64,000 nucleotides of DNA, from IMG/VR virus record IMGVR_UViG_3300020810_001156, positions 188,604 through 252,603 of that record; one strand, 5' to 3'. Every line of letters starts with the position of its first letter. The first letter of the stretch is position 1. Of this stretch, positions 3,933-19,364 are shown piece after piece. Both the position numbers and the translations under genes were made by a program. The notes below the pieces were generated by a model. That model saw only the letters and a list, made by a program, of their open reading frames with translations. It was not told the DNA's origin and searched no databases.

Positions 3933-5324
3933 ATGAGTAAAAAGAAAAAGATTCTTCTTCTTTCAGATGATTTAAGAATGGCGAGTGGTATCGCCACTAT
4001 GAGTAAAGCGTTGGTAATGGGAACTGTTGATAAATACGATTGGTTCCAAGTAGGTGCAGCAATTAACCACCCTGATAAAGGTAAAATTTTAGATGTATCG
4101 GCTGATATTCAAAAACAAACTGGTGTCGAAGATGCATCGGTTAAAATACTTCCGTGGACTGGATATGGTAACGCTGATTTGGTTAGACAATTACTAAATA
4201 CTGAAAGGCCTGATGCTATTCTTCACTTTACTGACCCAAGATATTGGATTTGGTTGTATGAAATGGAACATGAGTTAAGGCAAAACATTCCTATTTTATT
4301 CTATGCAATTTGGGATGATTTACCAGACCCACTTTACAATAGAAATTATTATGAGAGTTGTGATTGGATTGGTTGTATTTCAAGACAAACTTATGGTATT
4401 GTATCTCGTTTGACAAGTAGAACTGATAAACCAACTTGGAAACCTCATAAAGATTGGCAGGTATCTTATGTTCCTCATGGTATTAATCCAAATGAATACA
4501 AACCAATTGATGTACCTAAACCATTTAGAGATGAAATATTAGCTGGAAATGAGTACGATTATGTATTCTTCTGGTCAAATCGTAATATTCGTAGAAAACA
4601 ACCTTCGGATGTGATTATGGCATTTAAGGATTTTTGTAATAGAATAGGTGAAGAAAAAGCTAAGAAAGTTGCATTAGTAATGCATACCCAACCAACTGAC
4701 CAAAATGGTACTGATTTACCAAAAGTTCATCAGACATTAGCACCCGAATGTAATGTAATATTTTCAGATAAACGAAGAAGCGTAGCTGAACTGAATTATC
4801 TTTATAATATAGCAGATTGTACAATTAACATTGCAGGTAATGAAGGGTTTGGGTTAACAACTGCAGAATCGGTAATGAGTGGTACACCTATTATTGTAAA
4901 TGTTACAGGTGGATTACAAGACCAATGTGGATTCAGATTTAAAGATACTGGAGAACTTCTAACTGCTGAAGATTACAAAGAAATCGGTTCACTTCACAAA
5001 TGGAGAGATTGGGAAGATAAACTAACTTGGGGAGAATGGGCAAGACCAGTTTGGAGTAGAGCCCAAACTATGGCAGGGTCAGTTCCTACCCCATATATTT
5101 GGGATGATAAGATTGATGTATATGATGTGGCAACTGCTATGGAAGAAATGTACAAAAAACCCAAATCAGAACTGAAAGAAGCTGGTTTAAAAGGTAGAGA
5201 GATGTTCAAAGGTGAAATGGGGTTAGTAAACACAAATATGTGTCAAACTTTAGTAGATGGAATCGAAGGAACATTTGAAAATTGGAAACCAAGAAAAAAA
5301 TACGAATTATTTAAAATTAAGTAA
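3933..5324 (+). CDS. GT-B (GT4-like) glycosyltransferase
   Basis: VPHGI, NRNIRRKQ, NEGFGL..AE..MSGTPII. Confidence 0.85.
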   Translation: MSKKKKILLLSDDLRMASGIATMSKALVMGTVDKYDWFQVGAAINHPDKGKILDVSADIQKQTGVEDASVKILPWTGYGNADLVRQLLNTERPDAILHFTDPRYWIWLYEMEHELRQNIPILFYAIWDDLPDPLYNRNYYESCDWIGCISRQTYGIVSRLTSRTDKPTWKPHKDWQVSYVPHGINPNEYKPIDVPKPFRDEILAGNEYDYVFFWSNRNIRRKQPSDVIMAFKDFCNRIGEEKAKKVALVMHTQPTDQNGTDLPKVHQTLAPECNVIFSDKRRSVAELNYLYNIADCTINIAGNEGFGLTTAESVMSGTPIIVNVTGGLQDQCGFRFKDTGELLTAEDYKEIGSLHKWRDWEDKLTWGEWARPVWSRAQTMAGSVPTPYIWDDKIDVYDVATAMEEMYKKPKSELKEAGLKGREMFKGEMGLVNTNMCQTLVDGIEGTFENWKPRKKYELFKIK

Positions 5325-5325
5325 T

Positions 5326-5682
5326 ATGAATGATGTAAACAATTGTAATCACATAAATAATCTATACTTTAGAGCATTTAATGAAAAAAATTTAGATGTA
5401 TTGGCATCTCAAGTATATTCACCAAATGTTGTATTAAAAGATTGGGTTGGTGAATGGGTTGGTAGAGATAATGTTTTGTTGGAAAATAAAAAGTTTTTTG
5501 AAAATGAGTTTACTTTAACAGTTGAAAATACAATTATGGGATTTGATAATGATATGCACTTAGTTACTGCAAAAAATGATATTGTTATTGAGATTGGTGG
5601 AGAAACTATAAACGCAGTTGATGAATTAGTATTTGAACAAAATTCATCACGCATAAGAAGTATTACAGCATATAAAAGATAA
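5326..5682 (+). CDS. NTF2/SnoaL-like protein
   Basis: YFRAFNEKNL..YSPNVVLKDW..GRDNV...I.AYK; ATG 5326 preferred over the overlapping start at 5257. Confidence 0.7.
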   Translation: MNDVNNCNHINNLYFRAFNEKNLDVLASQVYSPNVVLKDWVGEWVGRDNVLLENKKFFENEFTLTVENTIMGFDNDMHLVTAKNDIVIEIGGETINAVDELVFEQNSSRIRSITAYKR

Positions 5683-5688
5683 GAAGTT

Positions 5689-6990
5689 ATGAACAAACCT
5701 TTATTAGTATTTCAAGCTCCTGTATTTACTCGAAGTGGTTATGGAGACCATTCGAGAGATATTCTTAGAAGCTTATTTAAAATGGAAAAGTACGATGTAA
5801 AAATTGTACCAATGAGGTGGGGAAATACCCCACAAGACCAAGCAGACCCTTCTACAGAATTTGGTCAGAAGATGTTATCAAATGTTGTAACTCAATTAGA
5901 TAGAAAACCTGATATTTTTATGCAAATGTCAGTTGCAAACGAATTTGAACCAAAGGGTAACTTTAATATTGGTATTACTGCAGGTGTAGAAACTACAATA
6001 CTTCCAAAAGAATTTATTGAAGGTTCTAATAAAATGGATTTAATAATAGTACCATCAGAATTTACAAAAAAATTAATGATTGGAACTGCATATCAAGAAA
6101 AAAATCAACAAACAGGTCAAATTGTACGAGAAATTAGAGTTACAAAACCAGTTGAAGTTTTATTTGAAGGTGTTGATTTGGATAGATACTTAAACTACCC
6201 AAAATCGGATACTGATATCTTAGAAGGTATTCAGACTGATTTCAACTTCTTATTTGTAGGACATTGGTTAAAGGGGCATTTAGGGCAGGATAGAAAAGAT
6301 ATTGGAATGATGATTAAAACATTCGCTACTGTATTTAAATTTTTACCAATGGAAAAAAGACCTGGTCTTATTCTTAAAACATCTCACGCTGGATTTTCTG
6401 TAATTGATAGAGAAAATATTAGAGAAAAGGTTGATAATATTCTTAATGGTATGGATAAAAAGGATATTCCACCAATTTACATATTACATGGTGATTTAGA
6501 TGATACAGAAATGGGTCAACTATATAATCATCCAAAAGTAAAGGCAATGGTATCATTTACCAAAGGTGAAGGATACGGTAGACCACTTGCAGAATTTGCT
6601 TTAAGTGGTAAACCTATTATTGTTTCAAGGTGGAGTGGTCAAGTTGATTTCTTACCTGAACAACATACTGTTTTCTTAGATGGACAATTAACTCCGGTAG
6701 ATGAATCAGCAGCTGATAAATTTATCTTAAAAGATTCTAAATGGTTTAGTGTAAACTACTCAGATGCAGCAAATAAATTTTATAAAGTTTTTAATGAATA
6801 TGATTCTTATTTAAAACAATCAGCTGGATTAAAAACAAATATTATCAATAATTTTAGTTTGGAAAAAATGGATAAAGTTTTTGAAGAAATGATGGAAAAT
6901 TACACATCATCGGTTCCTCAAATAAAACCATTTAATTTACCCAAATTGAATAAAAATAAAATGAATATTCCTAAATTAAATAAAGTATAA
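5689..6990 (+). CDS. GT-B (GT4-like) glycosyltransferase
   Basis: RSGYG, RKDIG, KGEGYGRPLAEFALSGKPII. Confidence 0.85.
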   Translation: MNKPLLVFQAPVFTRSGYGDHSRDILRSLFKMEKYDVKIVPMRWGNTPQDQADPSTEFGQKMLSNVVTQLDRKPDIFMQMSVANEFEPKGNFNIGITAGVETTILPKEFIEGSNKMDLIIVPSEFTKKLMIGTAYQEKNQQTGQIVREIRVTKPVEVLFEGVDLDRYLNYPKSDTDILEGIQTDFNFLFVGHWLKGHLGQDRKDIGMMIKTFATVFKFLPMEKRPGLILKTSHAGFSVIDRENIREKVDNILNGMDKKDIPPIYILHGDLDDTEMGQLYNHPKVKAMVSFTKGEGYGRPLAEFALSGKPIIVSRWSGQVDFLPEQHTVFLDGQLTPVDESAADKFILKDSKWFSVNYSDAANKFYKVFNEYDSYLKQSAGLKTNIINNFSLEKMDKVFEEMMENYTSSVPQIKPFNLPKLNKNKMNIPKLNKV

Positions 6991-7454
6991 TGAATTACAG
7001 TTCACAATATAGACAGTATTTAGATTATGGCAATCGTGTATCTAAATCCAGTATACAGCCATATGGAATTTACAAAATTTCAACCTATAAGTATGTTGAT
7101 GAAGGTAGACAGAGTCTAAAGGGTGAGTATGAAACTTTGATATTCGTTACGGGTATTTTTCAAAAGAAAGTTTCGGCACTGAAACTATCAAATATACAAC
7201 CACTTAAATTTTTAAATTGGTTTAAACGAATAGCTAATAATAAATACAATGAATCCGATTCTCAATATATTGGTTTATATGAAATAGAAACTCCAATGGA
7301 TATTGGTGGTAATCGTATTTATGATTCATACATCAGAAACAATAAAGATTTTGTAGCAAAAGGAGCAGCTTATAGAACTTATAAGTTAGAGGGTATTCAA
7401 TACGCTACTGAAGTATTTTTAAAGAAAAACATATTAGAAAGATATTATGGTTAA
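6990..7454 (+). CDS. Hypothetical protein
   Basis: Coupled ORF within the operon; no recognised motif. Confidence 0.5.
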   Translation: MNYSSQYRQYLDYGNRVSKSSIQPYGIYKISTYKYVDEGRQSLKGEYETLIFVTGIFQKKVSALKLSNIQPLKFLNWFKRIANNKYNESDSQYIGLYEIETPMDIGGNRIYDSYIRNNKDFVAKGAAYRTYKLEGIQYATEVFLKKNILERYYG

Positions 7455-8076
7455 TGTTACATATGCAATTACAGTTTGTAATGAGATAAATGAAATTACA
7501 AAATTAATAAACTTTCTTCACCCAAGAATCCAATCAGATGATGAGATTTTGATTCAGTATGATGAAGATGGTGTTACTGATGATGTTATGGGTTATCTGA
7601 GAATCATAAATGATTTGCATGATAATGTAAATGTGATTGGATTCCCTCTAAATAAAGATTTTGCATCTTACAAAAACAATCTAAAGAATCATGCTAAAGG
7701 TATTTTCATCTTCCAAATCGATGCTGATGAATTACCAAATGAATATTTGATTACAAATATGCATGATTTATTAAATGCAAATTTAGATATCGATTTATTC
7801 TTCGTTCCAAGAGTAAACACAGTTGAAGGATTGACACCAGAACATATCCAAAAATGGAGATGGAATGTAAATGAAAAAGGATGGGTGAATTGGCCTGATG
7901 TACAAACTCGTTTATATAGAAGAACTTCTGAAATTGAGTGGGTTGGTAAAGTACATGAAAGAATCAAAGGTTATAATACAATGACTTATTTACCATTAGA
8001 AGAAGATTTCTCATTGTATCATCCAAAGGATATAGAAAGACAAGAAAAACAAAACGCATTATACGAAACTATATGA
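7447..8076 (+). CDS. GT2 glycosyltransferase
   Basis: YAITVCNE, IDADE, W.GKVHE. Confidence 0.85.
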   Translation: MVNVTYAITVCNEINEITKLINFLHPRIQSDDEILIQYDEDGVTDDVMGYLRIINDLHDNVNVIGFPLNKDFASYKNNLKNHAKGIFIFQIDADELPNEYLITNMHDLLNANLDIDLFFVPRVNTVEGLTPEHIQKWRWNVNEKGWVNWPDVQTRLYRRTSEIEWVGKVHERIKGYNTMTYLPLEEDFSLYHPKDIERQEKQNALYETI

Positions 8077-9053
8077 AAGTAGCTTTTCTAACGGAAATGG
8101 GATTTGAGGGAACTATTCCCAATGAACATCCAAACGCTAGAACTGAGTTTGCTTGGATGAACGCTTTAGATGCGGTTCATTACCCATTAACAAAATACCA
8201 ATCGGTAAGTGGATATGATGTTGTGTTTATCATCTTCCCAAAAGGTAAACTATTTTTATCAGCAGAGGGTTCTAAAATAGGAGAAGGATTCAATCCAGCT
8301 TCTCAATATCTAAATGAACCAATAGTAGATACTTTAAAGAGTGTAAACAAAAAAGTATATTATATTCAAGAAGGACCTCATTGGTGGTGGAATGATTATG
8401 AGATTGTAGACCAAATTCAGTTCTATAATTTTTTAACAAAAACCGATGGTATCTTTGCACACAATGAATCCGATGTAAATTACTATAAAGGATTGTTACC
8501 AAATAAAAAAATAAAAGTGATTAGAACCTTAATGATTGAAGATTTGATTAAAAACATAAAATCACAATCTGAAGATAAGGTGTTGATTGGTGGTAACTTT
8601 GCAAGGTGGTATGGTGGATTCGAATCCTATATGGTAGCAACCGAATTTGGTGTTCCTATTTGGGGACAAGAATCTCATGCTAAGCGAAGTAACGAAGGAG
8701 CAATGGAAGATTTGAATCACTTTGATAGAATGGTTTGGATTGATTGGATGAAAGAAGTATCTAAGTTCAAATATGGGGTTCATCTAATGCCAACTGTAGC
8801 AGCTGGTACATTCTCACTTAATTGTGCATACTTTGGAATACCTGTAATTGGTAACATCAAAGTAGATACTCAAAAAACACTACATCCACTAACTTCAGTT
8901 GAAGTTGATGATGTGAAAGGTGCTAGAGAATTAGCTCAGAAATTAAGAGATGATAAAGATTTCTACAATCAATGTAGTAAGTTGGCTAGACAACAATATC
9001 AAAGTTATTACACCAAAGAAATTTGGTTAAATTATATGAAAGAAAGAATATGA
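8073..9053 (+). CDS. Probable GT-B glycosyltransferase
   Basis: C-terminal AGTFSLNCAYFGIPVIG resembles a GT-B nucleotide-binding region; cluster context. Confidence 0.55.
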   Translation: MKVAFLTEMGFEGTIPNEHPNARTEFAWMNALDAVHYPLTKYQSVSGYDVVFIIFPKGKLFLSAEGSKIGEGFNPASQYLNEPIVDTLKSVNKKVYYIQEGPHWWWNDYEIVDQIQFYNFLTKTDGIFAHNESDVNYYKGLLPNKKIKVIRTLMIEDLIKNIKSQSEDKVLIGGNFARWYGGFESYMVATEFGVPIWGQESHAKRSNEGAMEDLNHFDRMVWIDWMKEVSKFKYGVHLMPTVAAGTFSLNCAYFGIPVIGNIKVDTQKTLHPLTSVEVDDVKGARELAQKLRDDKDFYNQCSKLARQQYQSYYTKEIWLNYMKERI

Positions 9054-9820
9054 TTACAGCAGTACTAAATGGTTACAAACGAGGAGATAACCTCAACGAA
9101 CAATTGGAAGCGTTAAAAAATCAAACCTTACCACCTGATGAGATTTTATTATGGTACAATAATCCAGGTGATAATGATTTATTAAATTATGATATTGGTG
9201 GTGAAATACCAGTAGCTTATTGTAATTACAACTTTGGGGTTTGGGCAAGATTCTACTTTGCTATGAACGCTAGAAATCCATATGTAGTGGTATTTGATGA
9301 TGATACAATTCCGGGTAAAAAGTGGTTAGAAAATTGTATGAACACAATGAATGAAAGGGAGGGTTTATTAGGTACTGTTGGATTACTTTATCCAAATCCT
9401 CTCCCACCACAAAATTCTTCTTATTATGAACACTACCTCAGATTTGGCTGGCCAGAATTAGGTAACAATGATAGAACTGTTCAAGTTGATTTAGTTGGAC
9501 ATAGTTGGTTCTTCAAAAAAGAATGGTTATCTCATATGGTAAGAGAATTGCCTGACCCAAAATACAATACTTGCGGTGAGGATATGCACTTCTCTTATAT
9601 GTTACAAAAGTACGCTAATATTCCTACATTTGTACCACCACACCCTCGTTCAGATATGGAACTTTGGGGAAGTATTAAGGGTGGTGAGTATGGTGGAGAT
9701 GTTAACTCTCTTTGGGAATCAAATCAAGTAAATGTAGAAGGTACACCATTCAAACAATTGATGAATCAATATTTTCACGAACAAAGAAATAAAGGCTGGA
9801 AATTAGTAAATGAAAAATAA
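9050..9820 (+). CDS. GT-A (GT2-like) glycosyltransferase
   Basis: GYKR, FDDD, GEDMHFS. Confidence 0.75.
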   Translation: MITAVLNGYKRGDNLNEQLEALKNQTLPPDEILLWYNNPGDNDLLNYDIGGEIPVAYCNYNFGVWARFYFAMNARNPYVVVFDDDTIPGKKWLENCMNTMNEREGLLGTVGLLYPNPLPPQNSSYYEHYLRFGWPELGNNDRTVQVDLVGHSWFFKKEWLSHMVRELPDPKYNTCGEDMHFSYMLQKYANIPTFVPPHPRSDMELWGSIKGGEYGGDVNSLWESNQVNVEGTPFKQLMNQYFHEQRNKGWKLVNEK

Positions 9821-10811
9821 ACCAATATTACTCTGCTTTGGGACAAGACCCGAATGGTTGAAAATTAAACCATTGATTAAACTTATGGATAGAAGTGAAT
9901 ATAAACTTCTATTCACAGGTCAACACCCTGATTTGTTGAAGGATGTGGAAGTTGATTATCAAATCAATATGAGTACAACTAACAATAGATTGGACTCTAT
10001 CATTTCAGATTGTATGATTCAATTTCCAAATGGAGATTTTAAAGGTGTATTGGTACAGGGAGACACCGGTTCAGCATTTGGTTGCGCATTAGCCGCATTT
10101 AATAGACAAATCCGAATCTATTATTTGGAAGCAGGATTAAGGAGTGGTGATTTACAACACCCATATCCTGAAGAAGGTTATAGACAGATGATTGCAAGAA
10201 TCGCTGATGTAAACTTTACACCAACTGAATTATCGGCACAAAATCTTAAAGATGAAAAAGTACATGGAAGTATCTACACAGTTGGAAACTCAGTATTAGA
10301 TAACTTAGTAGATTTTCCAAAACCTACAATGGAAAATATTATTTTGATTACTTTACATCGTAGAGAAAATCACCATTGGATGGATAAATGGTTTGAGGAG
10401 ATTGAAAAACTTGCAGTTGAATATCCACATTATACATTTGTATTACCAATTCACCCAAACCCAAATGTAAAGAAACATAGACACATTTTAAAGAATGTAA
10501 CTGTGGTAGAACCAATGGAACATACGCATATGATTAATACTCTAATCAAATCAAACCTAATCATTTCAGATAGTGGTGGTTTGCAAGAAGAGGGTTCATT
10601 CTTCAATAAGAAAGTAATTGTATGTAGAAAAACAACCGAAAGACCTGAAGGTATAGAAACAGGTCATTTACATTTGTGTGATTCTCCTGAAGATTTGGGT
10701 GAATTATTTGGAAAACTAATAGAAAATCCGTATATTAGTGAAAATTGTCCTTATGGGGATGGATATACTTCACAAGCGGTATTAGAAATATTAAGAAATG
10801 AAGAACTTTAG
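9810..10811 (+). CDS. wecB: UDP-N-acetylglucosamine 2-epimerase (non-hydrolysing)
   Basis: GTRPE, TGQH, QGDT, EAGLRS, PEE, HRREN, DSGGLQEE, PYGDG. Confidence 0.93.
   Translation: MKNKPILLCFGTRPEWLKIKPLIKLMDRSEYKLLFTGQHPDLLKDVEVDYQINMSTTNNRLDSIISDCMIQFPNGDFKGVLVQGDTGSAFGCALAAFNRQIRIYYLEAGLRSGDLQHPYPEEGYRQMIARIADVNFTPTELSAQNLKDEKVHGSIYTVGNSVLDNLVDFPKPTMENIILITLHRRENHHWMDKWFEEIEKLAVEYPHYTFVLPIHPNPNVKKHRHILKNVTVVEPMEHTHMINTLIKSNLIISDSGGLQEEGSFFNKKVIVCRKTTERPEGIETGHLHLCDSPEDLGELFGKLIENPYISENCPYGDGYTSQAVLEILRNEEL
10707..10738 (+). promoter_or_regulatory. Internal Bacteroidota-type promoter within the wecB 3' end
   Basis: TTTG-N20-TATATTAG about 60 nt before ORF 10798. Confidence 0.55.
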
Positions 10812-11574: not shown

Positions 11575-11948
11575 TAGAATGTAGTAAAGAATATTGGGAA
11601 TTCGTAAGAGTTCTTAGAAATGATGAAAGAGTTCAAAGTGGATTTATTCACAACAATTTTATCACCGAAGAAATGCAAAAAAAGTATATGAGTGGAAACT
11701 CACAATACTATCGTATTGCTTTAGTAGATGGAGTGCCCGCTGGTTATGTGGGTGTTATCGAAGATGATATTAGAGTATGCACTGACCCTTTCTTTCAAGG
11801 TAAAGGAGTTGGTAAGTTTATGATAAATGAAATTATGAAAGAATATCCAACTGCATTTGCAAAAGTAAAAATAGATAATGAAGCAAGTTTGAGATTATTT
11901 AGAAGTTGTGGATTTAAAAAGAAATTTTATATACTAACAAAAGATTAA
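11565..11948 (+). CDS. GNAT N-acetyltransferase (PseH-like)
   Basis: LRND..V, FQGKGVG, N.ASLRLF...GF. Confidence 0.85.
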   Translation: MELVECSKEYWEFVRVLRNDERVQSGFIHNNFITEEMQKKYMSGNSQYYRIALVDGVPAGYVGVIEDDIRVCTDPFFQGKGVGKFMINEIMKEYPTAFAKVKIDNEASLRLFRSCGFKKKFYILTKD

Positions 11949-12576: not shown

Positions 12577-13193
12577 AAGTAATCATAGGTGGTATGGGGT
12601 TGAGTGGTAGCACTTTGTGTTATAATATATTTAGAGTTTTAAGAGATAACTCTGAATTGAATTATGAAGTCATAAAGATACATGAATATAATCATGCAGC
12701 TACTATGGGAAAAACTATTTTTATGATTAGAGATTTAAGAGATACTGTTGCATCTATGTTAAGGAAAGACCCAGAAAGATGGAATGGTGATGTTGAAGAA
12801 GCATCTAAGTATCAAATGATGTGGTACTATGATACTTGGAAAGATGTAAATAAAGATATTGTTTGGAAATATGAAGAGTATAAATCGAATCCATATGAAC
12901 ACACTTACTCAGCTATTAGTAAATTGGGATTGAATGTATCATATGATTTAGTAAAACAGGTTATAGATACTTGTGAAAATATAAAAGATATGAATATTCC
13001 ACATCACCAAGATTTTATACAAACTGAAGAAGAAGCTATTTTATGGGAAACCACAAAGATGAGTAAAAAACATATTACCAATGGTGGTAAGATTGGTGGA
13101 TATAAAGAATATTTAACCGAAGAGCAAATTAGATTTATTGAAACAAAATATAAATACTTTTTTGAAGAACAAAATTATCAGTTAGATTATTAA
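12573..13193 (+). CDS. Sulfotransferase-like protein
   Basis: SGST PAPS loop, RDLRDTVAS, KYEE, GKIGGYK..L. Confidence 0.7.
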   Translation: MKVIIGGMGLSGSTLCYNIFRVLRDNSELNYEVIKIHEYNHAATMGKTIFMIRDLRDTVASMLRKDPERWNGDVEEASKYQMMWYYDTWKDVNKDIVWKYEEYKSNPYEHTYSAISKLGLNVSYDLVKQVIDTCENIKDMNIPHHQDFIQTEEEAILWETTKMSKKHITNGGKIGGYKEYLTEEQIRFIETKYKYFFEEQNYQLDY

Positions 13194-13197
13194 AAAT

Positions 13198-13923
13198 ATG
13201 AAAGTAGCACTTTGTTTACATGGCTTATTTGATTCTTTGACAGATGAAAATTCAAAGGGATTGGATGGTTATAATCATATCAAAAAAAATATTTTGGATG
13301 TGGTTGATACCGATGTATTTGTACACAGTTGGGAAATTGAAAAAATGGATGAGATTACTAAATTATATAATCCAAAATCTTCCATATTTGAAGGACAGAA
13401 AGATTTTACTAATATAATAAACAAAAACAAATTAAACACATTATCAGCTCCACCAAGACCACCATTTAGTGTTTTATCTCATCTTTATAGTGTAACTGAA
13501 TCTATGAAGTTGGCATTTAATAGTGAGGTTGAATATGATATTATCATTAAGGCAAGATTTGATTTAGGAAGAATTAATAGAAGAACATCTGGGCCGGGTA
13601 GAGGTAATCCATATCCAGTTCAATGTATCAATTTTCAAACTGATATTGAAAAAGATAAGATTTATATGGCGAATTGGCAACACTTTCATATGGGACCTGC
13701 TGATATGTGGTTTTATGGTTCATCAAAAGTAATGAATCCTTTCACAACTTTATACAAATCGGTAGAAAAAAATATGAAGTTAGGTGGTGAGTTTCATCAA
13801 TTCGCTACATCAATAGAAGGTAATCCAAATGATTTATCGAATGCTATTGCATTTTATAAATGGTGGATGATAGGAAATGGATTATGGAATAAAAAAATAA
13901 AATTAGATACAATATGGGAATAA
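13198..13923 (+). CDS. Putative glycosyltransferase (KVALCLxG / RFD family)
   Basis: KVALCLHG, DVFVHSW, YDIIIKARFDL; paralogous to ORF 52879 and to the C-half of ORF 34338. Confidence 0.6.
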   Translation: MKVALCLHGLFDSLTDENSKGLDGYNHIKKNILDVVDTDVFVHSWEIEKMDEITKLYNPKSSIFEGQKDFTNIINKNKLNTLSAPPRPPFSVLSHLYSVTESMKLAFNSEVEYDIIIKARFDLGRINRRTSGPGRGNPYPVQCINFQTDIEKDKIYMANWQHFHMGPADMWFYGSSKVMNPFTTLYKSVEKNMKLGGEFHQFATSIEGNPNDLSNAIAFYKWWMIGNGLWNKKIKLDTIWE

Positions 13924-14612
13924 ACGTACCTTTAATAATTTATACACATTCGGATTATAAAGATGTGTGGAAACTTTTATTTGGTCAGTTAAAAAAATAC
14001 TTACCAAATCAAAAAGTATATGTTTTAAGTGATTCTAATGCAGAAGAAATACCATCGAATTATACTACAATAGTTTACGATGATTCTAAAGTTTATACTG
14101 ATAGATTAAAACAATGTCTTTCTCAGATTAATGAAGATGTGGTTCTATTTCAGCATGAGGATATGGTTCTTTTTAATGAACCTAAATTTGAATTGTTTGA
14201 TAAGTACATAGATTATGTTAAAAATGAGATGGTTGATAGTGTTAAGTTGATTTATGTCCAAGAAAACGATGTGGTATCTGAATTAGATTCTACATTAATT
14301 TCTAATTCATATTCTAAATTTTCTATTCAACCTACTTTGATAAAATTAAAAAATTTCGTATCTTTGTTAGATTCAACCGAACCTTTAAATATTTGGGATT
14401 TTGAATTAGCAGTTCCTGCTGAAGGAAAACACTATATGGTAAGATTGGGTGATGAGAAAAAACGAGGATTATATCACTCTGATAGTATCATATATCCTTA
14501 CATAGCAACTGCTATTACAAAAGGAAAGTGGAACTATGGTGAATATTCATTTGAATTCGATAAATTATTTAATGAATATGGTATTATACCATTTGAAAGA
14601 GGAATTTCATAA
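13914..14612 (+). CDS. Putative GT-A glycosyltransferase
   Basis: HSDYKDVW, FQHEDM, IWDFE, KGKW. Confidence 0.5.
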   Translation: MGINVPLIIYTHSDYKDVWKLLFGQLKKYLPNQKVYVLSDSNAEEIPSNYTTIVYDDSKVYTDRLKQCLSQINEDVVLFQHEDMVLFNEPKFELFDKYIDYVKNEMVDSVKLIYVQENDVVSELDSTLISNSYSKFSIQPTLIKLKNFVSLLDSTEPLNIWDFELAVPAEGKHYMVRLGDEKKRGLYHSDSIIYPYIATAITKGKWNYGEYSFEFDKLFNEYGIIPFERGIS

Positions 14613-15220
14613 TGAATAAAATAAAATTTGATATTGGTGCTAATAGTGGAAGTGATACTAGAAGAATGGCTTCGGATGGTTCTATTGTTTACGCATTTGA
14701 ACCAACACATGAATTATTAATGAATCATCTCTGGCCACTTTCTAATCAGAATCCAAATATAAAAGTTATACCATTTGCGGTTGATGTTAAAAACTCATTC
14801 CAAACATTCAATATTTCTGCAAATAGAGATTGGGGTTGTAGTAGTTTATATGAGTTTTCCGATGATATAGAGAAGAAATGGCCAAACAGACCCGATTTCA
14901 AAAAAACTCATTCTTATGAAGTTCCTACAATAACTTTATATGATTTTTGTAATTTGTATAACATAGATAGGATTGATATGTTACACATAGATGCACAGGG
15001 TAATGATTTTAATGTTCTATTGAGTTTAAAAGACAAAATATCAATAGTTAAAGAAGGGGTGGTTGAAGCATCTGATAAAGTTGATTTATACAGTGGAGCT
15101 ACCAATAGAATAGAATACATAAGATATTTTTTAATATCGAATGGATTTAAGATTGTAAAAGAAACACCTAACGATGTTGTAGGTGCCGAAGTTAATATAA
15201 GGTTTATAAAAAATGATTAA
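14612..15220 (+). CDS. FkbM-family methyltransferase
   Basis: DIGANSG, AFEP, HIDAQGND. Confidence 0.88.
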   Translation: MNKIKFDIGANSGSDTRRMASDGSIVYAFEPTHELLMNHLWPLSNQNPNIKVIPFAVDVKNSFQTFNISANRDWGCSSLYEFSDDIEKKWPNRPDFKKTHSYEVPTITLYDFCNLYNIDRIDMLHIDAQGNDFNVLLSLKDKISIVKEGVVEASDKVDLYSGATNRIEYIRYFLISNGFKIVKETPNDVVGAEVNIRFIKND

Positions 15221-16577
15221 GTTAGTTATATTTGATTTGGATGGTGTTCTTGTTGAAGCAAAAAACATCCACTATGATGCACTCAATGAAGCTTTGGGTG
15301 AACAATACGCAATTAGTTGGGCTGAACACCTATCAACTTACGATGGATTAAAAACCAATCAAAAGTTGGAGATGTTGAGTGAGATAAAAGGATTACCAAC
15401 CGAACTACACAAAGAGATTTGGGAAGGTAAACAAAAATTGACATTACAAAAGTTGAAAGAGTTAAAACCAAACCAAACTCTACAATCGGTAATGAACGCA
15501 TTGGTTGAGGATGGATACAAAATAGCAGTTTGTTCCAATTCAATCAGAAAGACAGTTTTGACTGTACTTTCAAAGTTGGGTATTATGGAGTTTATGGATT
15601 ACATCATCTCAAACGAAGATGTACAAAACTCTAAACCACACCCTGAGATGTATTGGAGAGCAATCTCAAAGATGGGATGTTTACCATCTGAAACTCTAAT
15701 CGTAGAGGATTCACCTTATGGGTTACTTGCAGCATCTCGTTCTAACGCTCATGTGTTGAGAGTTAGAAATCCACAAGAAGTAACCTACACAAACATATTT
15801 AAAAAATTAACTGAAATAGAAATGGGACAAACAAATGATAAACCAAAATGGGTGGATAATAAGTTAAATGTATTAATTCCAATGGCTGGAGCTGGTAGTA
15901 GATTCCAACAAGCAGGATACACATTTCCAAAACCACTAATTGATGTGGAAGGTAAACCTATGATTCAGGTCGTGGTAGAAAATCTAAACATCGAAGCAAA
16001 TTATATCTATGTAGTTCAGAAATCACATAGGGAGAAATTCAATTTGGATACCTTACTTAATCTTATTACTCCTAATTGTAAGATTGTAGAAGTAGATGGT
16101 ATTACCGAAGGAGCAGCTTGTACTGCACTTTTGGCTAAAGAACATATTGATAACGATAATCCATTATTCTTCGCTAACTCAGACCAATTTGTAGAATGGG
16201 ATTCAAATGAGTTCTTCTACAAAATGAATGAGAACGATGCTGATGGTGGTATCCCAACATTCAAAGCAACTCACCCAAAGTGGTCATTTGCTAAGTTGGA
16301 TGAAGATGGTTTTGTGACCGAAGTGCAAGAGAAAAACCCAATCTCAGATTTAGCAACAGTGGGTTTCTATTATTGGAAACATGGTTCTGATTTTGTGAAA
16401 TACGCTGAAGAAATGATTGAGCAGGATATTAGAGTAAACAATGAATTCTATGTTTGTCCTGTTTACAACAACGCAATTAAAGGTGGATTAAAGGTGAGAA
16501 CATTTGATGTACCAAAGATGTGGGGACTTGGAACACCTGAAGATTTGAATAGATACTTAGAGAATTATGGTAAGTAG
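15213..16577 (+). CDS. HAD phosphatase fused to sugar nucleotidyltransferase
   Basis: FDLDGVL, SKPHPE and EDS in the N-half; IPMAGAGSRF..PKPLI and LGTPEDL in the C-half. Confidence 0.88.
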   Translation: MIKLVIFDLDGVLVEAKNIHYDALNEALGEQYAISWAEHLSTYDGLKTNQKLEMLSEIKGLPTELHKEIWEGKQKLTLQKLKELKPNQTLQSVMNALVEDGYKIAVCSNSIRKTVLTVLSKLGIMEFMDYIISNEDVQNSKPHPEMYWRAISKMGCLPSETLIVEDSPYGLLAASRSNAHVLRVRNPQEVTYTNIFKKLTEIEMGQTNDKPKWVDNKLNVLIPMAGAGSRFQQAGYTFPKPLIDVEGKPMIQVVVENLNIEANYIYVVQKSHREKFNLDTLLNLITPNCKIVEVDGITEGAACTALLAKEHIDNDNPLFFANSDQFVEWDSNEFFYKMNENDADGGIPTFKATHPKWSFAKLDEDGFVTEVQEKNPISDLATVGFYYWKHGSDFVKYAEEMIEQDIRVNNEFYVCPVYNNAIKGGLKVRTFDVPKMWGLGTPEDLNRYLENYGK

Positions 16578-17256
16578 TGATAACAAATATACCAAAATGC
16601 AAAAGGGTGCGTATAGAAGTGGAACTTCTAACCATCCTGAGCATAATGGTAATCCCGATTATTGGAATATTCTTTTAGGTGATTTAAAAGATAGAGATAG
16701 TTGGGTAAATAAAGTTGGTTTAGATTTTGCTTGTGGTAAGGGTAGAAATGTAACAAATATGTTATCTTTATCCGATTGGAAACGAATTGATGGTATTGAT
16801 ATCTCAGAAGCTAACATTGTTTATTGTAAGGAAAATTATAAAGGACAAGATAGTGATTGGTATGTAAATAATGGAGTTGATGTATCTCAATTGAAAAATA
16901 ACGAATATGATTTCATCATGTCAACCATCGCACTACAACATATTCCAGTATATGATATCAGAAAATCACTAATAACCGATTTACTTAGAACTTTGAAACC
17001 AGGTGGAATATTTTCATTCCAAATGGGATATGGTCAGGAAATAAAACCAAATGAAAATAGATATCCATACCACACAAACCATTATGATGCTGGTGGAACT
17101 AATTCACATTCTGATGTGAGGGTACAAAGTGAATCTGAAATTATAGAAGATTTAACAAACATTGGATTTATCAATATAGAAACATATGTGAGAGATACAT
17201 TCTCAGATAATGGACATCCTCAATGGATATATGTAAAAGCTTATAAACCAGAATAA
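16567..17256 (+). CDS. Class I SAM-dependent methyltransferase
   Basis: LDFACGKG, GIDIS, LQHI, LKPGG. Confidence 0.85.
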   Translation: MVSSDNKYTKMQKGAYRSGTSNHPEHNGNPDYWNILLGDLKDRDSWVNKVGLDFACGKGRNVTNMLSLSDWKRIDGIDISEANIVYCKENYKGQDSDWYVNNGVDVSQLKNNEYDFIMSTIALQHIPVYDIRKSLITDLLRTLKPGGIFSFQMGYGQEIKPNENRYPYHTNHYDAGGTNSHSDVRVQSESEIIEDLTNIGFINIETYVRDTFSDNGHPQWIYVKAYKPE

Positions 17257-18486
17257 ATGAAAAGAATAACATTTGTAATACCTTGTAGAAGTAATCTACC
17301 ATATCTACAACAAGCCGTAGGTTCTATTGAAGAACACTATGGTAATTCGCATGATGTGGTAATCTTAGATGATGCATCTGATGATAATAGTTGGAATTGG
17401 ATTACTGAATACTCAGAAGGTAGGGATAATATAATCGCTTATAGAAACGAAGGACCTGATAGAGTTGGACACACTGTATTGTATGATGTTGGTTTTGATT
17501 TAGCAAAAACCGAAGTAGTATCAATTCTACACTCGGATATGGTGGTAACACCAAACTATGTGGAAAATATGTTGAAACACTTAGAAGTAAAAAAGGTAGT
17601 TTCAGCAACTCGAATTGAACCACCACTTCATCCACCTGGTCCTGAAAAGTATGTACAAAACTTTGGATTAGAAGTAGATGAGTTCTCAGAACAAAAAGAA
17701 AACTTTTTAAACTTCGTATCACAAAAGGAAATAGAAAATGAGGGTAAAGTTACTGATGGTATATTTGCACCTTGGATGATGTACAAAGAAGATTTTGTTG
17801 ATATTGGTGGGCATGATTTCTTATTCGCACCAATGGAGTTAGAAGATTCTGATATCTTTAATAGATTTTTTCTAAATGGATACGAGTTGATTCAAAGTAG
17901 AGATGCATTTGTATATCATATGACTTGTAGGGGTAGTAGGTTCAAAGATGGAATTGAAATTGAAAAAGAAATTCCACTACCCGATGGCACAATTTGGTAC
18001 AAACCAAAAGATTCCGAAGAGTACACTATTCTAAGACAACACAAATTTAGAGAATGGTGGAGAAAGTGGCATACTGATGTATTACATGATGAATTTATGA
18101 TGCCAATCGTTCCAAGTAGATATGATACTGGATTTATTGTTAAAAATTGTAATACTCAAATTCTATCCATCTTAGAACCTTGGTGTGATACAATCTATGT
18201 TGATTGTGATTACAAAGCATATGTAGATGCTGAAAACGAAAAATCTGAATATGATATATCGGAATCGGTTAAACCATATGATAATGAAAAGAACAATCAC
18301 ATATTGATTTCATTTGATGCAAGTAAATTAACAAATCAACACTTTACTGAATTCATCAAACAATTACCATTCATCATTGAAGAAACTGGTCAAACTGGTT
18401 CATTTAATTGGGATATCTTTCAAATAGATATTATCTCTTTAGAAGAAGTTGATATGATTAAACCACATTTTAAAAATATATTTTAA
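17257..18486 (+). CDS. GT2 glycosyltransferase
   Basis: FVIP, DDASDD, HSDM, EDSD. Confidence 0.85.
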   Translation: MKRITFVIPCRSNLPYLQQAVGSIEEHYGNSHDVVILDDASDDNSWNWITEYSEGRDNIIAYRNEGPDRVGHTVLYDVGFDLAKTEVVSILHSDMVVTPNYVENMLKHLEVKKVVSATRIEPPLHPPGPEKYVQNFGLEVDEFSEQKENFLNFVSQKEIENEGKVTDGIFAPWMMYKEDFVDIGGHDFLFAPMELEDSDIFNRFFLNGYELIQSRDAFVYHMTCRGSRFKDGIEIEKEIPLPDGTIWYKPKDSEEYTILRQHKFREWWRKWHTDVLHDEFMMPIVPSRYDTGFIVKNCNTQILSILEPWCDTIYVDCDYKAYVDAENEKSEYDISESVKPYDNEKNNHILISFDASKLTNQHFTEFIKQLPFIIEETGQTGSFNWDIFQIDIISLEEVDMIKPHFKNIF

Positions 18487-19364
18487 TGAAAAATAAATCA
18501 ACTTTAGTATGTATGCATGTAATGCCTCAAGAGATAGAGATGTTCATACAACTAATAAATAATTATAAATTATCTCTTAAACATTTAGATGATAGTGATG
18601 ATGTTACTCTAAAAATATCATTAAACTTAAATCCTGAGTTAACGGATTGGGATAATACAAACGTACCTAAAGATGAATTTATCGGTGTTTTTAATGATGT
18701 TACAAATGATATATCCAATTTAGATAAAGAAATTATAACCGATACTTCTTTGTGGGGAACAACCCAACAAAAAAGAGAAGCTATAAAATTAGATTATGAC
18801 CAATTTATCTTTTGTGATACTGATATAGTTTTACATCAACATCAATTAAAACATCAATTAAATGCAGCTAAACAATTAAATGGTATGTACATACTATCAC
18901 CAGCATTACCAAGATGGTGGGATAAAACATGGGATGTATTGGTATCATCAAATAGGTTAAATGGTGAATTTGGCGAAGCGTTTGAGAAAGAATGTATAAA
19001 AGATGTACTAACACAAAAATATACCGATTTATCTTTAAGACTGGTTGCACCAATTAAATTTGGTAATGGTATGCACACATTATATTCAAAGGAGTTTTGG
19101 GATTTCATAAAAATACCAGAATCATTTGGTGGATATGGGCCTGAAGATACTTTTGCTATGTATGCATCCCATAACGCTATTGTAAGTAAACAATACCCAA
19201 TAAAACAGTATGTATTAGATGGTATCTATATAACTGAAGATTATACTCATAGAATCCCAAGCTTTAACGATAACTTTACTTCTTTTAATAAAAAAGATGA
19301 ATTCTATAAAAAAGCAGAATCTCTCTTTGATAAAGAAATGGATAACTTTTTACAAAGAATCTGA
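18486..19364 (+). CDS. Putative GT-A glycosyltransferase
   Basis: CDTD, GYGPED. Confidence 0.55.
   Translation: MKNKSTLVCMHVMPQEIEMFIQLINNYKLSLKHLDDSDDVTLKISLNLNPELTDWDNTNVPKDEFIGVFNDVTNDISNLDKEIITDTSLWGTTQQKREAIKLDYDQFIFCDTDIVLHQHQLKHQLNAAKQLNGMYILSPALPRWWDKTWDVLVSSNRLNGEFGEAFEKECIKDVLTQKYTDLSLRLVAPIKFGNGMHTLYSKEFWDFIKIPESFGGYGPEDTFAMYASHNAIVSKQYPIKQYVLDGIYITEDYTHRIPSFNDNFTSFNKKDEFYKKAESLFDKEMDNFLQRI

What the first reader, a model, noticed from the sequence alone, without database searches (positions are those of the whole stretch)
3933..19364. Near-autonomous phage glycosylation island without export or polymerase genes
Seen: about ten glycosyltransferase-like genes (GT-B, GT-A, GT-D-like) plus WecB, an aminotransferase, a GNAT, two methyltransferases, a sulfotransferase and a HAD-nucleotidyltransferase, tightly coupled. 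No Wzx/Wzy/ABC exporter or initiating phosphoglycosyl transferase is present in the window. Inference: the glycans are built on cytoplasmic acceptors such as virion proteins or DNA, analogous to fibril glycosylation in giant viruses, or they remodel host surface-glycan precursors.
Basis: partly seen in the sequence, partly recalled or inferred. Interest (0 to 1): 0.7.

Follow-up and report, generated by a model that had tools for sequence, protein, structure and literature searches.

The report
Jumbo-phage glycosylation island, swappable cassette
A 252-kb salt-marsh jumbo phage carries a 16-kb operon of soluble sugar-building enzymes: a four-gene core shared by a whole phage lineage plus a swappable cassette, with no membrane export step, so it most likely coats phage proteins with a strain-specific glycan, though the acceptor is unproven.

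Summary
Window 3713-19690 is one tightly packed plus-strand block in a complete 252.6-kb myovirus-type jumbo phage. It has 19 main ORFs, none with a transmembrane helix.

Eight ORFs are supported glycosyltransferases: GT4/GT-B x2, GT2 x3, GT-A fold x2 and GT-D fold x1. Two more are candidates. Also present are WecB, GNAT, two methyltransferases, a HAD-mutase/nucleotidyltransferase fusion, a conserved short DegT-like protein and a sub-threshold sulfotransferase.

The whole genome has no initiating phosphoglycosyl transferase and no Wzx/Wzy/ABC-2-like permease.

New here:
- A 65-aa protein plus GT4, GT-B and GT2 form a core. The three glycosyltransferases occur in the same order in 52 of 52 related loci with enough flank, including Flavobacterium phage immuto and Microcystis phage Mel-JY01.
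- The genes between this core and the conserved 3' genes differ among phages with near-identical backbones.
- The core GT-B family was found only in phage contigs.
- Elsewhere the genome encodes a TibC-type protein heptosyltransferase with ADP-heptose-type genes, beside giant fibre genes.

Virion-protein glycosylation is the favoured reading (about 0.5). DNA modification is disfavoured. Remodelling of host glycans is not excluded.

The parts
3713..3910 (+). 65-aa conserved small protein, ribbon-helix-helix-like by pattern; first gene of the conserved core
   Evidence: Found just upstream of the ORF1 homologue in 68 of 78 related loci, mostly within 100 nt. Alignment A6 shows a conserved KLTSVKV...LQKLVNR pattern. 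No Pfam hit. The best structured PDB match is a CopG RHH protein at E = 0.62, which is not significant.
3933..5324 (+). ORF1, GT4-family GT-B glycosyltransferase (core)
   Evidence: Glycos_transf_1 at 4.7e-8; GT4-conflict at 25.5 bits, just under its cut-off. Best PDB hit is chlorovirus B736L (3OY2), E = 1.6e-8. Present in 52 of 52 flanked loci.
5326..5682 (+). ORF2, SnoaL-like small protein (present in the close clade only)
   Evidence: SnoaL_2 at 3.1e-6. Start taken from the metagenome gene call. 36-46% identical in close relatives and absent in distant ones.
5689..6990 (+). ORF3, GT4-type GT-B glycosyltransferase (core)
   Evidence: PHROG 2170 at 2.2e-16. Invariant E294-x7-E302 motif. B736L is the only PDB hit. 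98 homologous loci, all phage-like.
6990..7454 (+). ORF4, 154-aa phage-only protein of unknown function
   Evidence: No family hit. Only viral hypothetical clusters in the Atlas. 27-81% identical in part of the lineage.
7447..8076 (+). ORF5, short GT2 (GT-A) glycosyltransferase (core)
   Evidence: Glycos_transf_2 at 7.8e-6. Always third in the core order.
8073..9053 (+). ORF6, candidate GT-B-like protein (unresolved)
   Evidence: No family hit. 23% identical (tblastn E = 1.5e-13) to immuto gp98, annotated as a mannosyltransferase. hhalign against the ORF3 family is not significant.
9050..9820 (+). ORF7, GT2 glycosyltransferase
   Evidence: Glycos_transf_2 at 2.1e-8. Start from the gene call.
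9810..10811 (+). ORF8, UDP-GlcNAc 2-epimerase (WecB/NeuC family)
   Evidence: Epimerase_2 at 1.6e-63.
10798..11574 (+). ORF9, GT-D-fold glycosyltransferase
   Evidence: AF2 model with pLDDT 93. The top three Foldseek PDB hits are DUF1792 GT-D enzymes, E from 1.7e-5 to 4.9e-4, probability 1.00. D28-G29-E30 is invariant.
11565..11948 (+). ORF10, GNAT acetyltransferase
   Evidence: Acetyltransf_1 at 6.2e-10.
11950..12576 (+). ORF11, short DegT-like protein (208 aa)
   Evidence: DegT_DnrJ_EryC1 at 2.3e-22 in two stretches. Keeps the Lys and Asp of the PLP site but lacks internal segments and the C-terminal domain. The same short form is in immuto gp99, 44% identical.
12573..13193 (+). ORF12, sulfotransferase-like protein (weak); specific to this phage
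   Evidence: Sulfotransfer_1 at 4.6e-4, 20.1 bits against a cut-off of 22. P-loop-like and RDxRD motifs seen by eye. No homologue in related loci apart from the identical phage.
13198..13923 (+). ORF13, unknown protein (phrog_13607 family)
   Evidence: phrog_13607 at 2.9e-12. Viral clusters only; some neighbours carry DUF7796.
13914..14612 (+). ORF14, GT-A-fold protein
   Evidence: Atlas structure search: TM 0.74 to a giant-virus Gly_transf_sug/GT8 cluster and 0.60-0.68 to GT2 clusters.
14612..15220 (+). ORF15, FkbM-family methyltransferase; specific to this phage
   Evidence: Methyltransf_21 at 7.6e-17. Absent from related loci.
15213..16577 (+). ORF16, HAD (beta-phosphoglucomutase-like) fused to a sugar-1-phosphate nucleotidyltransferase
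   Evidence: HAD_2 at 2.8e-32 and NTP_transferase at 7.4e-10. beta-PGM family and RmlA-like hits. 87-94% identical in close relatives even where the cassette differs.
16567..17256 (+). ORF17, class I SAM methyltransferase
   Evidence: Methyltransf_11 at 7.5e-13.
17257..18486 (+). ORF18, GT2 glycosyltransferase
   Evidence: Glycos_transf_2 at 7.7e-16. 43% identical to immuto gp102.
18486..19364 (+). ORF19, GT-A-fold glycosyltransferase
   Evidence: AF2 model with pLDDT 94. 298 PDB matches at E <= 1e-3; the top ones are ppGalNAc-T2, AvpGT and SpsA, and Mimivirus R699 is also among them. Invariant D111-x-D113. JGI names some homologues as capsule glycosyltransferases.
19427..19654 (+). 75-aa ORF with two hydrophobic segments; last ORF before the terminator
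   Evidence: Gene call and sequence. No Pfam hit.
19663..19690 (+). Terminator-like hairpin with a T-run
   Evidence: It is the only plus-strand terminator-like site after 3667 in the scanned stretch.

Best explanation
The block at 3713-19690 is a phage-borne glycan assembly line that works in the cytoplasm without a lipid carrier.

Conserved core. It has four genes: a 65-aa protein that looks like a ribbon-helix-helix regulator, a GT4 enzyme, a second GT4-type GT-B enzyme and a short GT2. I infer that the three enzymes lay down an inner glycan on an acceptor that the phage itself provides.

Variable cassette. In this phage it encodes a UDP-GlcNAc 2-epimerase, a mutase/nucleotidyltransferase fusion, an acetyltransferase, a short DegT-like protein, a sulfotransferase-like protein, two methyltransferases and five or more further GT-A and GT-D transferases. 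I infer that it supplies and tailors the outer sugars.

Product and acceptor. The product would be a decorated heteroglycan specific to each strain. The most likely acceptor is one or more virion proteins. That would give the particle a variable glycan coat, as in chloroviruses, mimiviruses and mycobacteriophages.

Shown: the gene content, the solubility of all 19 main products, the lack of initiation and export genes, the core-plus-cassette architecture, and its restriction to phage contigs.

Inferred: the acceptor, the order of enzyme action, the glycan structure and the regulatory role of the 65-aa protein.
For: 1. All 19 main products lack TM helices. The whole genome lacks Bac_transf, WecA/MraY and any polytopic permease. 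The islands of 74 related loci (1.05 Mb) hold no ORF with 3 or more TM segments.

2. ORF1, ORF3 and ORF5 occur together, in the same order, in 52 of 52 loci with enough flank. The 65-aa ORF lies upstream in 68 of 78 loci.

3. Cultured phages on hosts from different phyla carry the core: Flavobacterium phage immuto and Microcystis phage Mel-JY01.

4. A scan of one genome for each of 185,579 species found ORF3 relatives on only 26 contigs. All belong to MAGs from many unrelated phyla. Those with enough flank carry the core, and many also carry phage clamp-loader and nuclease genes. No isolate genome has it.

5. Phages with 86-96% identical flanking replication proteins carry different middles. 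Alternatives include pyruvyl transferase with DUF6492 and a GT-D-like protein, two SDR dehydratase/epimerases, or a full-length DegT with hexapeptide acyltransferase, KAS III and PhyH.

6. The best solved relative of ORF1 and ORF3 is the chlorovirus glycosyltransferase B736L. ORF9 has the fold of the GT-D enzymes that glycosylate streptococcal serine-rich adhesins.

7. The same genome encodes a TibC homologue (PDB 4RAP, E = 2.5e-48). It is followed by PfkB-kinase and cytidylyltransferase-like genes, which resemble a split HldE. It lies just downstream of a 2802-aa fibre-like gene and a tail-fibre assembly chaperone. So this phage has the means for cytoplasmic protein O-glycosylation.

8. Possible acceptors exist. 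Giant proteins of 4590 and 3866 aa carry 361 and 172 proline-free G-(T/S)-(S/T) collagen-like triplets. One of them has a C-terminal endosialidase-chaperone domain.

9. Contigs from four salt-marsh metatranscriptome libraries cover the first 6 kb of the island.
Against: No acceptor is shown.

The gene families are the same ones that build lipid-linked surface polysaccharides. Peripheral transferases without TM helices commonly act on undecaprenyl-linked intermediates, so solubility proves little.

The collagen-like giants and the TibC homologue are absent from the complete immuto genome, which still has the core. They cannot be the core's universal acceptor or partner.

B736L has no known acceptor itself (PMC9614988).

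The fold matches of ORF19 to polypeptide GalNAc-transferases are generic GT-A matches, with TM about 0.5.

The island sits in the replication module, not the structural module.

The RNA-library contigs could be DNA carry-over.
Confidence: 0.5

Rival explanations
1. Host-envelope remodelling. The soluble transferases extend or alter host undecaprenyl-linked intermediates (O-antigen, capsule or protein-glycan precursors). The host's own initiating transferase, flippase and ligase start and export these. The infected cell surface changes as a result, for example to block superinfection or to stop progeny re-adsorbing to debris.
For: The gene families are typical of envelope polysaccharide loci: WecB, GT2, GT4, FkbM, and pyruvyl transferase in relatives. 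Similar gene sets in large cyanophages are usually read this way (PMC12801897). The host is a diderm, as implied by a phage-encoded TonB-dependent receptor. Diversifying cassettes would fit competition among phages for receptors.
Against: The same core is kept in phages cultured on Bacteroidota and on Cyanobacteria, whose lipid-linked intermediates differ. The core GT-B family is missing from all isolate genomes scanned. That is unexpected for enzymes borrowed from host envelope pathways. No relative carries any membrane step. The genome also holds a dedicated protein glycosyltransferase.
Confidence: 0.25
2. DNA hypermodification. The transferases build an oligosaccharide on a modified base in phage DNA to evade restriction, as in T-even phages, RB69/DLP3 and the 5mYOX-linked clusters.
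For: The island lies among replication and nuclease genes: PolB, clamp loader and a PD-(D/E)XK nuclease directly upstream. Phage transferases can put di- and trisaccharides on DNA (10.1101/2023.12.21.572611; PMC13326640).
Against: No known source of a hydroxylated base was found. The single ThyA homologue aligns with bona fide thymidylate synthases at 281 bits and keeps the dUMP-type Asn. The one in relative L088 does the same. There is no Tet/JBP and no TGT/DpdA. Published LC-UV-MS of phage immuto DNA shows dA, dC, dT and fdPreQ1 only (PMC10516641). Eight or more transferases plus sulfation and methylation exceed any DNA glycan described in those papers.
Confidence: 0.07
3. Another cytoplasmic acceptor. 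The glycan is made on host proteins as a takeover or anti-defence modification, on a small molecule, or as a free oligosaccharide.
For: ORF1 scores just under the cut-off of Pfam's 'GT4 in conflict systems' family in this phage and its relatives. A DruA-like protein lies nearby. No acceptor is known.
Against: A pathway with 8-10 transferases and decorating enzymes is oversized for a signalling or inactivating modification. Cassette variability suggests an exposed product. Nothing points to a specific host target.
Confidence: 0.1

Closest known systems
Chlorovirus capsid glycosylation machinery (PBCV-1 A064R and others; NY-2A B736L / PBCV-1 A546L)
   Same: The virus encodes soluble transferases and methyltransferases that act in the cytoplasm without the host's secretory glycosylation route. 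B736L is the best solved sequence relative of ORF1 (E = 1.6e-8) and the only one of ORF3 (PMC9614988).
   Different: Those are eukaryotic viruses and N-link their glycans to the capsid protein. B736L itself has no known acceptor. Identity to it is low and limited to the C-terminal Rossmann domain. No glycan has been shown here.
Mimivirus/Megavirinae fibril glycosylation gene clusters
   Same: These are clustered virus genes for sugar-nucleotide synthesis, tailoring (aminotransferase, acetyltransferase, methyltransferase) and several transferases. They decorate surface fibrils, and cluster content is clade-specific (PMC9614988; otherwise my own knowledge). A giant-virus multi-domain transferase cluster and Mimivirus R699 are among the fold neighbours of ORF14 and ORF19.
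   Different: This is a bacteriophage with a different gene set. It has a fixed core followed by a swappable cassette. A fibre acceptor is only a candidate here.
Mycobacteriophage virion glycosylation (Freeman et al. 2023, cited in PMC12619734)
   Same: Phage-encoded transferases O-glycosylate capsid and tail-tube proteins in the cytoplasm. This shows that the mechanism exists in tailed phages.
   Different: Those systems have 2-4 genes and no sugar-nucleotide pathway. No sequence relationship was tested here. The hosts are Actinobacteria.
Streptococcal serine-rich-repeat adhesin glycosylation (GT-D dGT1, DUF1792)
   Same: ORF9 has the GT-D fold and the D-x-E motif of the enzyme that extends O-glycans on a Ser-rich protein in the cytoplasm.
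   Different: About 12% identity and TM about 0.5, with no hit to Pfam's family. The rest of that pathway (GtfA/GtfB, accessory Sec) is absent. ORF3 keeps its catalytic E-x7-E, so it is not a GtfB-like inactive partner.
TibC/AAH autotransporter heptosyltransferases (BAHT family)
   Same: The 383-aa protein at L006:12258-13409 aligns with TibC over residues 42-375, including the C-terminal Cys cluster (E = 2.5e-48). It is followed by genes resembling the two halves of HldE, the ADP-heptose synthase.
   Different: It lies outside the island, in a phage, beside fibre and chaperone genes rather than an autotransporter. It is absent from immuto, which has the core. No paper in the searched library links TibC to phage proteins.
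Glycosyltransferase-rich large aquatic phages (moraphages; cyanophages S-SCSM2R, P-SSM2)
   Same: These are large aquatic myovirus-type phages with many transferases of unknown target. Moraphages have four core glycosyltransferase orthogroups and predicted Bacteroidota hosts (PMC12619734). S-SCSM2R has 13 transferases (PMC12801897).
   Different: Those papers do not describe a fixed core order, cassette swapping or a lineage-wide lack of membrane steps. Whether this phage is a moraphage was not established. It has no DnaK, but only 8 of the 25 moraphages do.
Wzx/Wzy- or ABC-dependent O-antigen and capsule loci
   Same: Mixed transferases plus sugar-nucleotide genes, and a conserved-flank, variable-middle population structure.
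   Different: There is no initiating transferase, flippase, polymerase, chain-length regulator or ABC transporter in the genome. The flanks are phage genes.

Membership tests
Virus-encoded, host-independent protein glycosylation system | The virus genome encodes several transferases that are soluble and cytoplasmic | tested here: met
   8 supported transferases, none with a TM helix.
Virus-encoded, host-independent protein glycosylation system | The virus encodes sugar-nucleotide synthesis or tailoring enzymes | tested here: met
   WecB, the HAD-NTP transferase fusion, GNAT and two methyltransferases in the island. Two SDR epimerase/dehydratases lie at 47616-48473 and 49431-50333.
Virus-encoded, host-independent protein glycosylation system | The glycan is demonstrated on a virion protein | not testable with these tools
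   Needs glycoproteomics or staining of purified virions.
Bacterial surface-polysaccharide locus (Wzx/Wzy or ABC type) | An initiating phosphoglycosyl transferase (Bac_transf or WecA/MraY family) | tested here: not met
   No match in the whole genome at E <= 0.1, while the control genomes matched.
Bacterial surface-polysaccharide locus (Wzx/Wzy or ABC type) | A flippase, polymerase or ABC-2 permease (polytopic membrane proteins) | tested here: not met
   Hydropathy scan of all six frames. Only a tape-measure-like 868-aa ORF and a 467-aa ORF with 4 TM segments, neither with a Pfam hit. None in the islands of 74 related loci.
Bacterial surface-polysaccharide locus (Wzx/Wzy or ABC type) | Cellular genomic context | tested here: not met
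   Virus record that is 100% complete by CheckV. Flanks are a clamp loader, a PD-(D/E)XK nuclease and PolB.
Phage DNA glycosyl-hypermodification pathway | An enzyme that makes a hydroxylated base (dCMP/dUMP-modifying ThyA homologue, or C5-MT with 5mYOX/TET) | tested here: not met
   The one ThyA homologue is a canonical thymidylate synthase. No Tet_JBP hit, although that family's control rang nowhere.
Phage DNA glycosyl-hypermodification pathway | Glycosylated nucleosides in virion DNA | not testable with these tools
   Indirect only: immuto, which carries the core, shows dA, dC, dT and fdPreQ1 by LC-MS (PMC10516641).
Seroconverting-phage Gtr system | Membrane proteins GtrA (flippase), GtrB (bactoprenol transferase) and GtrC | tested here: not met
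   No polytopic membrane protein in the island or in relatives.
GT-D glycosyltransferases (DUF1792), for ORF9 | GT-D fold | tested here: met
   The top three Foldseek PDB hits are 4PHR, 4PFX and 5V4A, probability 1.00, TM 0.50-0.53.
GT-D glycosyltransferases (DUF1792), for ORF9 | Metal-binding D-x-E motif | tested here: met
   D28, G29 and E30 are invariant in 24 sequences. That this motif corresponds to the catalytic one is from my own knowledge.
GT-D glycosyltransferases (DUF1792), for ORF9 | Sequence match to the family profile | tested here: not met
   No Pfam hit. The profile search of PDB sequences was empty.
BAHT (TibC/AAH) protein heptosyltransferases, for the protein at L006:12258-13409 | Full-length similarity to TibC, including the Cys cluster | tested here: met
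   4RAP at E = 2.5e-48, residues 42-375 against 40-379. GT9 and TibC_1st Pfam hits.
BAHT (TibC/AAH) protein heptosyltransferases, for the protein at L006:12258-13409 | An autotransporter adhesin as acceptor | tested here: not met
   Its neighbours are a 2802-aa fibre-like protein and a tail-fibre assembly chaperone, not an autotransporter.

The most novel reading that the evidence does not exclude
A widespread clade of aquatic jumbo and large myophages carries a phage-only glycosylation core: a 65-aa regulator-like protein, GT4, GT-B and GT2. Recombining sugar cassettes follow it. Together they give virions strain-specific glycan 'serotypes' on surface proteins. In this phage the targets could include giant proline-free G-T/S-S/T collagen-like fibres, with a TibC-type heptosyltransferase as a second, independent protein-glycosylation arm. 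This would be a phage counterpart of O-antigen diversity, and the first phage use of a BAHT enzyme.
Probability: 0.3. Interest if true: 0.8.

Novelty: new variant of a known kind. Interest (0 to 1): 0.6.

Why it matters
Virus-made glycan coats are established for giant viruses and for a few mycobacteriophages. For environmental phages, large transferase sets are routinely labelled 'host cell-wall modification' or 'DNA glucosylation' without evidence.

This island offers a tractable case:
- The core is fixed, restricted to phage contigs, and present in about 100 loci.
- Two cultured phages (immuto and Mel-JY01) carry it and could be tested directly.
- The cassette varies between near-identical backbones, which points to strong diversifying selection on the product.

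If the product sits on virions, phage particles would carry variable glycans. These could affect adsorption, aggregation, grazing, decay or recognition by host defences.

The TibC homologue would extend a protein-glycosylation family known from bacterial adhesins to phages.

Tried and rejected
- Megablast of the island against cultured phages found nothing. Protein-level searches were needed.
- Collagen-like giants as the universal acceptor of the core: rejected. The complete immuto genome has the core but no collagen repeats and no TibC homologue. They remain candidates for this phage only.
- A GtfA/GtfB-like pair, with ORF3 as an inactive partner: rejected, because ORF3 keeps an invariant E-x7-E. 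I therefore ran no complex prediction.
- ORF6 and ORF13 as transferases: hhalign against the ORF3 and ORF19 families was not significant. Both are unresolved.
- ORF9 by sequence profile against PDB: empty. Only the fold search worked.
- ORF4 against immuto's 152-aa protein at the same position: no similarity.
- The 65-aa protein as a ribbon-helix-helix: no Pfam hit, and the best PDB profile match to a CopG protein has E = 0.62. This is pattern-based only.
- ORF12 against PDB sequences: chance hits only.
- The ThyA homologue near the core in relative L088 as a hydroxymethylase: rejected. It is a canonical thymidylate synthase with insertions.
- Membership of the published 'moraphage' lineage: could not be established from the paper text.
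- One neighbourhood look-up (L058) found no record.
- The promoter scan gave fewer sigma-70-like sites than shuffles, and terminator counts were at chance. Only the positions of the hairpins are used.

Full report
WHAT THE SEQUENCE IS

The window is bases 188,604-252,603 of a single 252,603-bp IMG/VR virus record that CheckV rates 100% complete. GC is about 32% with no dip at the island, and almost every gene is on the plus strand.

The rest of the genome encodes a tail sheath, a family-B DNA polymerase and an SbcCD-like nuclease. So this is a myovirus-type jumbo phage.

The nearest cultured relative by PolB is Microcystis phage Mel-JY01, at 52% identity. Near-identical DNA occurs in more than a dozen salt-marsh and marine metagenome runs.

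Upstream of the island lie a DruA-like protein, two clamp-loader subunits and a PD-(D/E)XK nuclease. A cellular capsule locus is therefore excluded.

CHECK OF THE OBSERVATION

Nineteen ORFs at 3933-19364 overlap or abut one another and are bounded by 266-nt and 374-nt gaps. Metagenome gene calls shift three starts: ORF2 to 5326, ORF7 to 9050 and ORF10 to 11565. They also add a 65-aa ORF at 3713-3910 and a 75-aa ORF at 19427-19654.

Profile searches give these assignments:
- ORF1: GT4.
- ORF5, ORF7, ORF18: GT2.
- ORF3: a PHROG glycosyltransferase.
- ORF8: WecB.
- ORF10: GNAT.
- ORF15: FkbM methyltransferase.
- ORF17: class I SAM methyltransferase.
- ORF16: a beta-phosphoglucomutase-like HAD fused to an RmlA-like nucleotidyltransferase.
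- ORF2: SnoaL-like.

ORF3 keeps an invariant E-x7-E motif across 13 homologues that are 42-78% identical to it.

Fold evidence adds three transferases:
- ORF9 gave a confident model (pLDDT 93). Its top three PDB neighbours are the DUF1792 GT-D structures, and its D-x-E motif is invariant.
- ORF14 has a stored Atlas model. It matches GT-A families, best a giant-virus Gly_transf_sug/GT8 cluster at TM 0.74.
- ORF19 (pLDDT 94) is a GT-A enzyme with 298 PDB matches and an invariant D-x-D.

That makes eight supported transferases. ORF6 and ORF13 remain candidates and ORF4 is unknown.

- ORF11 is a 208-aa short DegT-like protein. It retains the Schiff-base Lys and the PLP Asp but lacks internal segments and the whole C-terminal domain. 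The same short form occurs in immuto at 44% identity, so it is a conserved variant and not a broken gene.
- ORF12 is under the sulfotransferase cut-off.

ABSENCE OF MEMBRANE STEPS

- None of the 19 proteins has a hydrophobic 19-mer above the usual threshold.
- The whole genome has no Bac_transf or WecA/MraY match, while the control genomes did.
- A six-frame hydropathy scan finds only two real multi-TM ORFs. One is a 467-aa protein with four segments. The other is an 868-aa Ala/Leu/Gly-rich protein just after the sheath gene, which is probably the tape measure. Neither has a Pfam hit.
- In 74 related loci (1.05 Mb) only four plus-strand ORFs have three or more TM segments: two in immuto and one each in L075 and L076. 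All lie outside the islands.

ARCHITECTURE ACROSS RELATIVES

A scan of IMG/VR with ORF3 returned 70 loci. A scan of one genome per prokaryotic species returned 26 more.

All 26 are MAG contigs assigned to many unrelated phyla, ten of them Bacteroidota. Those with enough flank carry the same gene trio, and many also carry the phage clamp-loader and nuclease genes. They are therefore mis-binned phage DNA. No isolate genome has the gene.

In all 52 loci with enough flank on both sides, homologues of ORF1, ORF3 and ORF5 are present in that order. The 65-aa ORF lies directly upstream in 68 of 78 loci.

The two cultured carriers infect Flavobacterium and Microcystis.

Downstream of ORF5 the content changes. 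This happens even between phages whose flanking replication proteins are 86-96% identical to this one:
- One relative replaces WecB-to-FkbM with DUF6492, GT2, a polysaccharide pyruvyl transferase and a GT-D-like gene.
- Another has two SDR dehydratase/epimerases.
- A 297-kb contig has GT92, a CmcI-type methyltransferase, a full-length DegT, a hexapeptide acyltransferase, PhyH, KAS III and an SDR.

ORF12 and ORF15 are unique to this phage. ORF16, ORF18 and ORF19 are semi-conserved at the 3' end.

Plus-strand terminator-like hairpins lie only at 3644-3667 and 19663-19676. This fits one long transcription unit, although the scan as a whole is at chance level.

WHICH ACCEPTOR

DNA is disfavoured:
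- The only ThyA homologue is an ordinary thymidylate synthase.
- There is no Tet/JBP and no TGT/DpdA.
- The known DNA-glycan pathways cluster with such enzymes.
- Published LC-MS of immuto DNA shows three canonical nucleosides plus fdPreQ1.

For host lipid-linked glycans, the gene families fit and solubility is no obstacle. Two things argue against a host-specific acceptor: the core's conservation across host phyla, and its absence from cellular genomes.

Virion proteins are supported by several lines:
- The best solved relative of ORF1 and ORF3 is chlorovirus B736L. Its own acceptor is unknown, however.
- ORF9 has the fold of an adhesin-glycosylating enzyme.
- The genome proves able to glycosylate proteins elsewhere. 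At genome position 84.3-89.5 kb the genes run in this order:
  - a 2802-aa Ser/Thr-rich protein;
  - a tail-fibre assembly chaperone;
  - a 727-aa protein with GT4, methyltransferase and GT25 domains;
  - a TibC homologue (E = 2.5e-48 to PDB 4RAP);
  - cytidylyltransferase-like and PfkB-kinase genes resembling a split ADP-heptose synthase.
- Mel-JY01 and a complete 271-kb relative have the TibC homologue too. Immuto does not.
- Giant proteins of 4590 and 3866 aa carry 361 and 172 G-X-Y triplets, with Thr or Ser at X in more than 90% and mostly Ser at Y, and no proline. The second ends in an endosialidase-chaperone domain typical of fibres.
- From my own knowledge, Thr-rich collagen-like regions such as BclA of Bacillus anthracis and Riftia cuticle collagen are O-glycosylated, and glycosylation stabilises the helix in the latter. 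This is only an analogy.

Collagen repeats track the TibC gene (present in three complete genomes, absent in immuto) and do not track the core.

VERDICT

The island is real, and so is the missing export machinery. It belongs to a known kind: virus-encoded glycosylation gene clusters, noted but not explained in large aquatic phages.

Three features were not described in the papers I could search:
- the fixed four-gene core;
- the cassette swapping;
- the restriction to phage contigs, together with the TibC homologue.

The mechanism I favour is a glycan coat on virion proteins, at about 0.5. Host-glycan remodelling follows at about 0.25. DNA and other acceptors share the rest.

Contigs from four metatranscriptome libraries cover the first 6 kb, which is compatible with expression but does not prove it.

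Noticed in passing
L006:9300-14540 (genome 84,300-89,540; outside the window): A second glycosylation locus beside a 2802-aa fibre-like gene. It holds a tail-fibre assembly chaperone, a 727-aa protein with GT4, Methyltransf_24 and GT25 domains, a TibC-family protein heptosyltransferase (PDB 4RAP, E = 2.5e-48), a cytidylyltransferase-like protein and a PfkB kinase. The last two resemble a split ADP-heptose synthase. TibC homologues are rare in phage records: Mel-JY01 and three huge uncultured phages.
   Followed up: partly
L086:1219-14991 and L087:1082-12682 (genome 126,219-139,991 and 142,082-153,682): Giant proteins of 4590 and 3866 aa with long proline-free collagen-like runs of G-(T/S)-(S/T) triplets (361 and 172 triplets). 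The second has a C-terminal Peptidase_S74 chaperone domain. A 4828-aa ORF lies just upstream.
   Followed up: partly
window 44469-46445: A phage-encoded TonB-dependent receptor, with Plug (3.1e-21) and beta-barrel (2.9e-35) domains. This is an outer-membrane protein gene in a phage and implies a diderm host.
   Followed up: no
window 3-1025: A homologue of the Druantia defence protein DruA (PF14236, 6.3e-22), 405 aa in full, between PolB and the clamp loader. It is conserved in close relatives.
   Followed up: no
window 47616-48473 and 49431-50333: Two NAD-dependent sugar-nucleotide epimerase/dehydratase genes about 28 kb downstream of the island. They could supply the keto-sugar step that the island lacks.
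   Followed up: no
window 11950-12576: A conserved short DegT-like family (about 210 aa) that keeps the PLP Lys and Asp but lacks the C-terminal domain. It is also found in Flavobacterium phage immuto gp99 and in two MAG-binned phage contigs. Function unknown.
   Followed up: partly
window 34338-35810: A 490-aa protein whose C-terminal half belongs to the same PHROG (13607) as island ORF13. This is a second copy of that unknown domain outside the island.
   Followed up: no
window 25312-26922 and 22814-25300: A subtilase-family protease (Peptidase_S8, 6.8e-34) that also hits a tail-fibre PHROG. It is preceded by an 828-aa protein with 25% Ser+Thr and no family hit.
   Followed up: no
window 42448-44431, 53566-54393, 56572-58197, 60508-62625: A non-specific endonuclease followed by a DNA methyltransferase, a canonical thymidylate synthase, GroEL, and a CCA-adding tRNA nucleotidyltransferase.
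   Followed up: partly
window 3650-9600: Contigs from four salt-marsh metatranscriptome libraries match the first 6 kb of the island with few or no mismatches, at low depth. DNA carry-over is not excluded.
   Followed up: partly
window 19427-19690: A 75-aa ORF with two hydrophobic segments, followed by a GC-rich hairpin and a T-run. This is the only membrane-like product next to the island. Function unknown.
   Followed up: no
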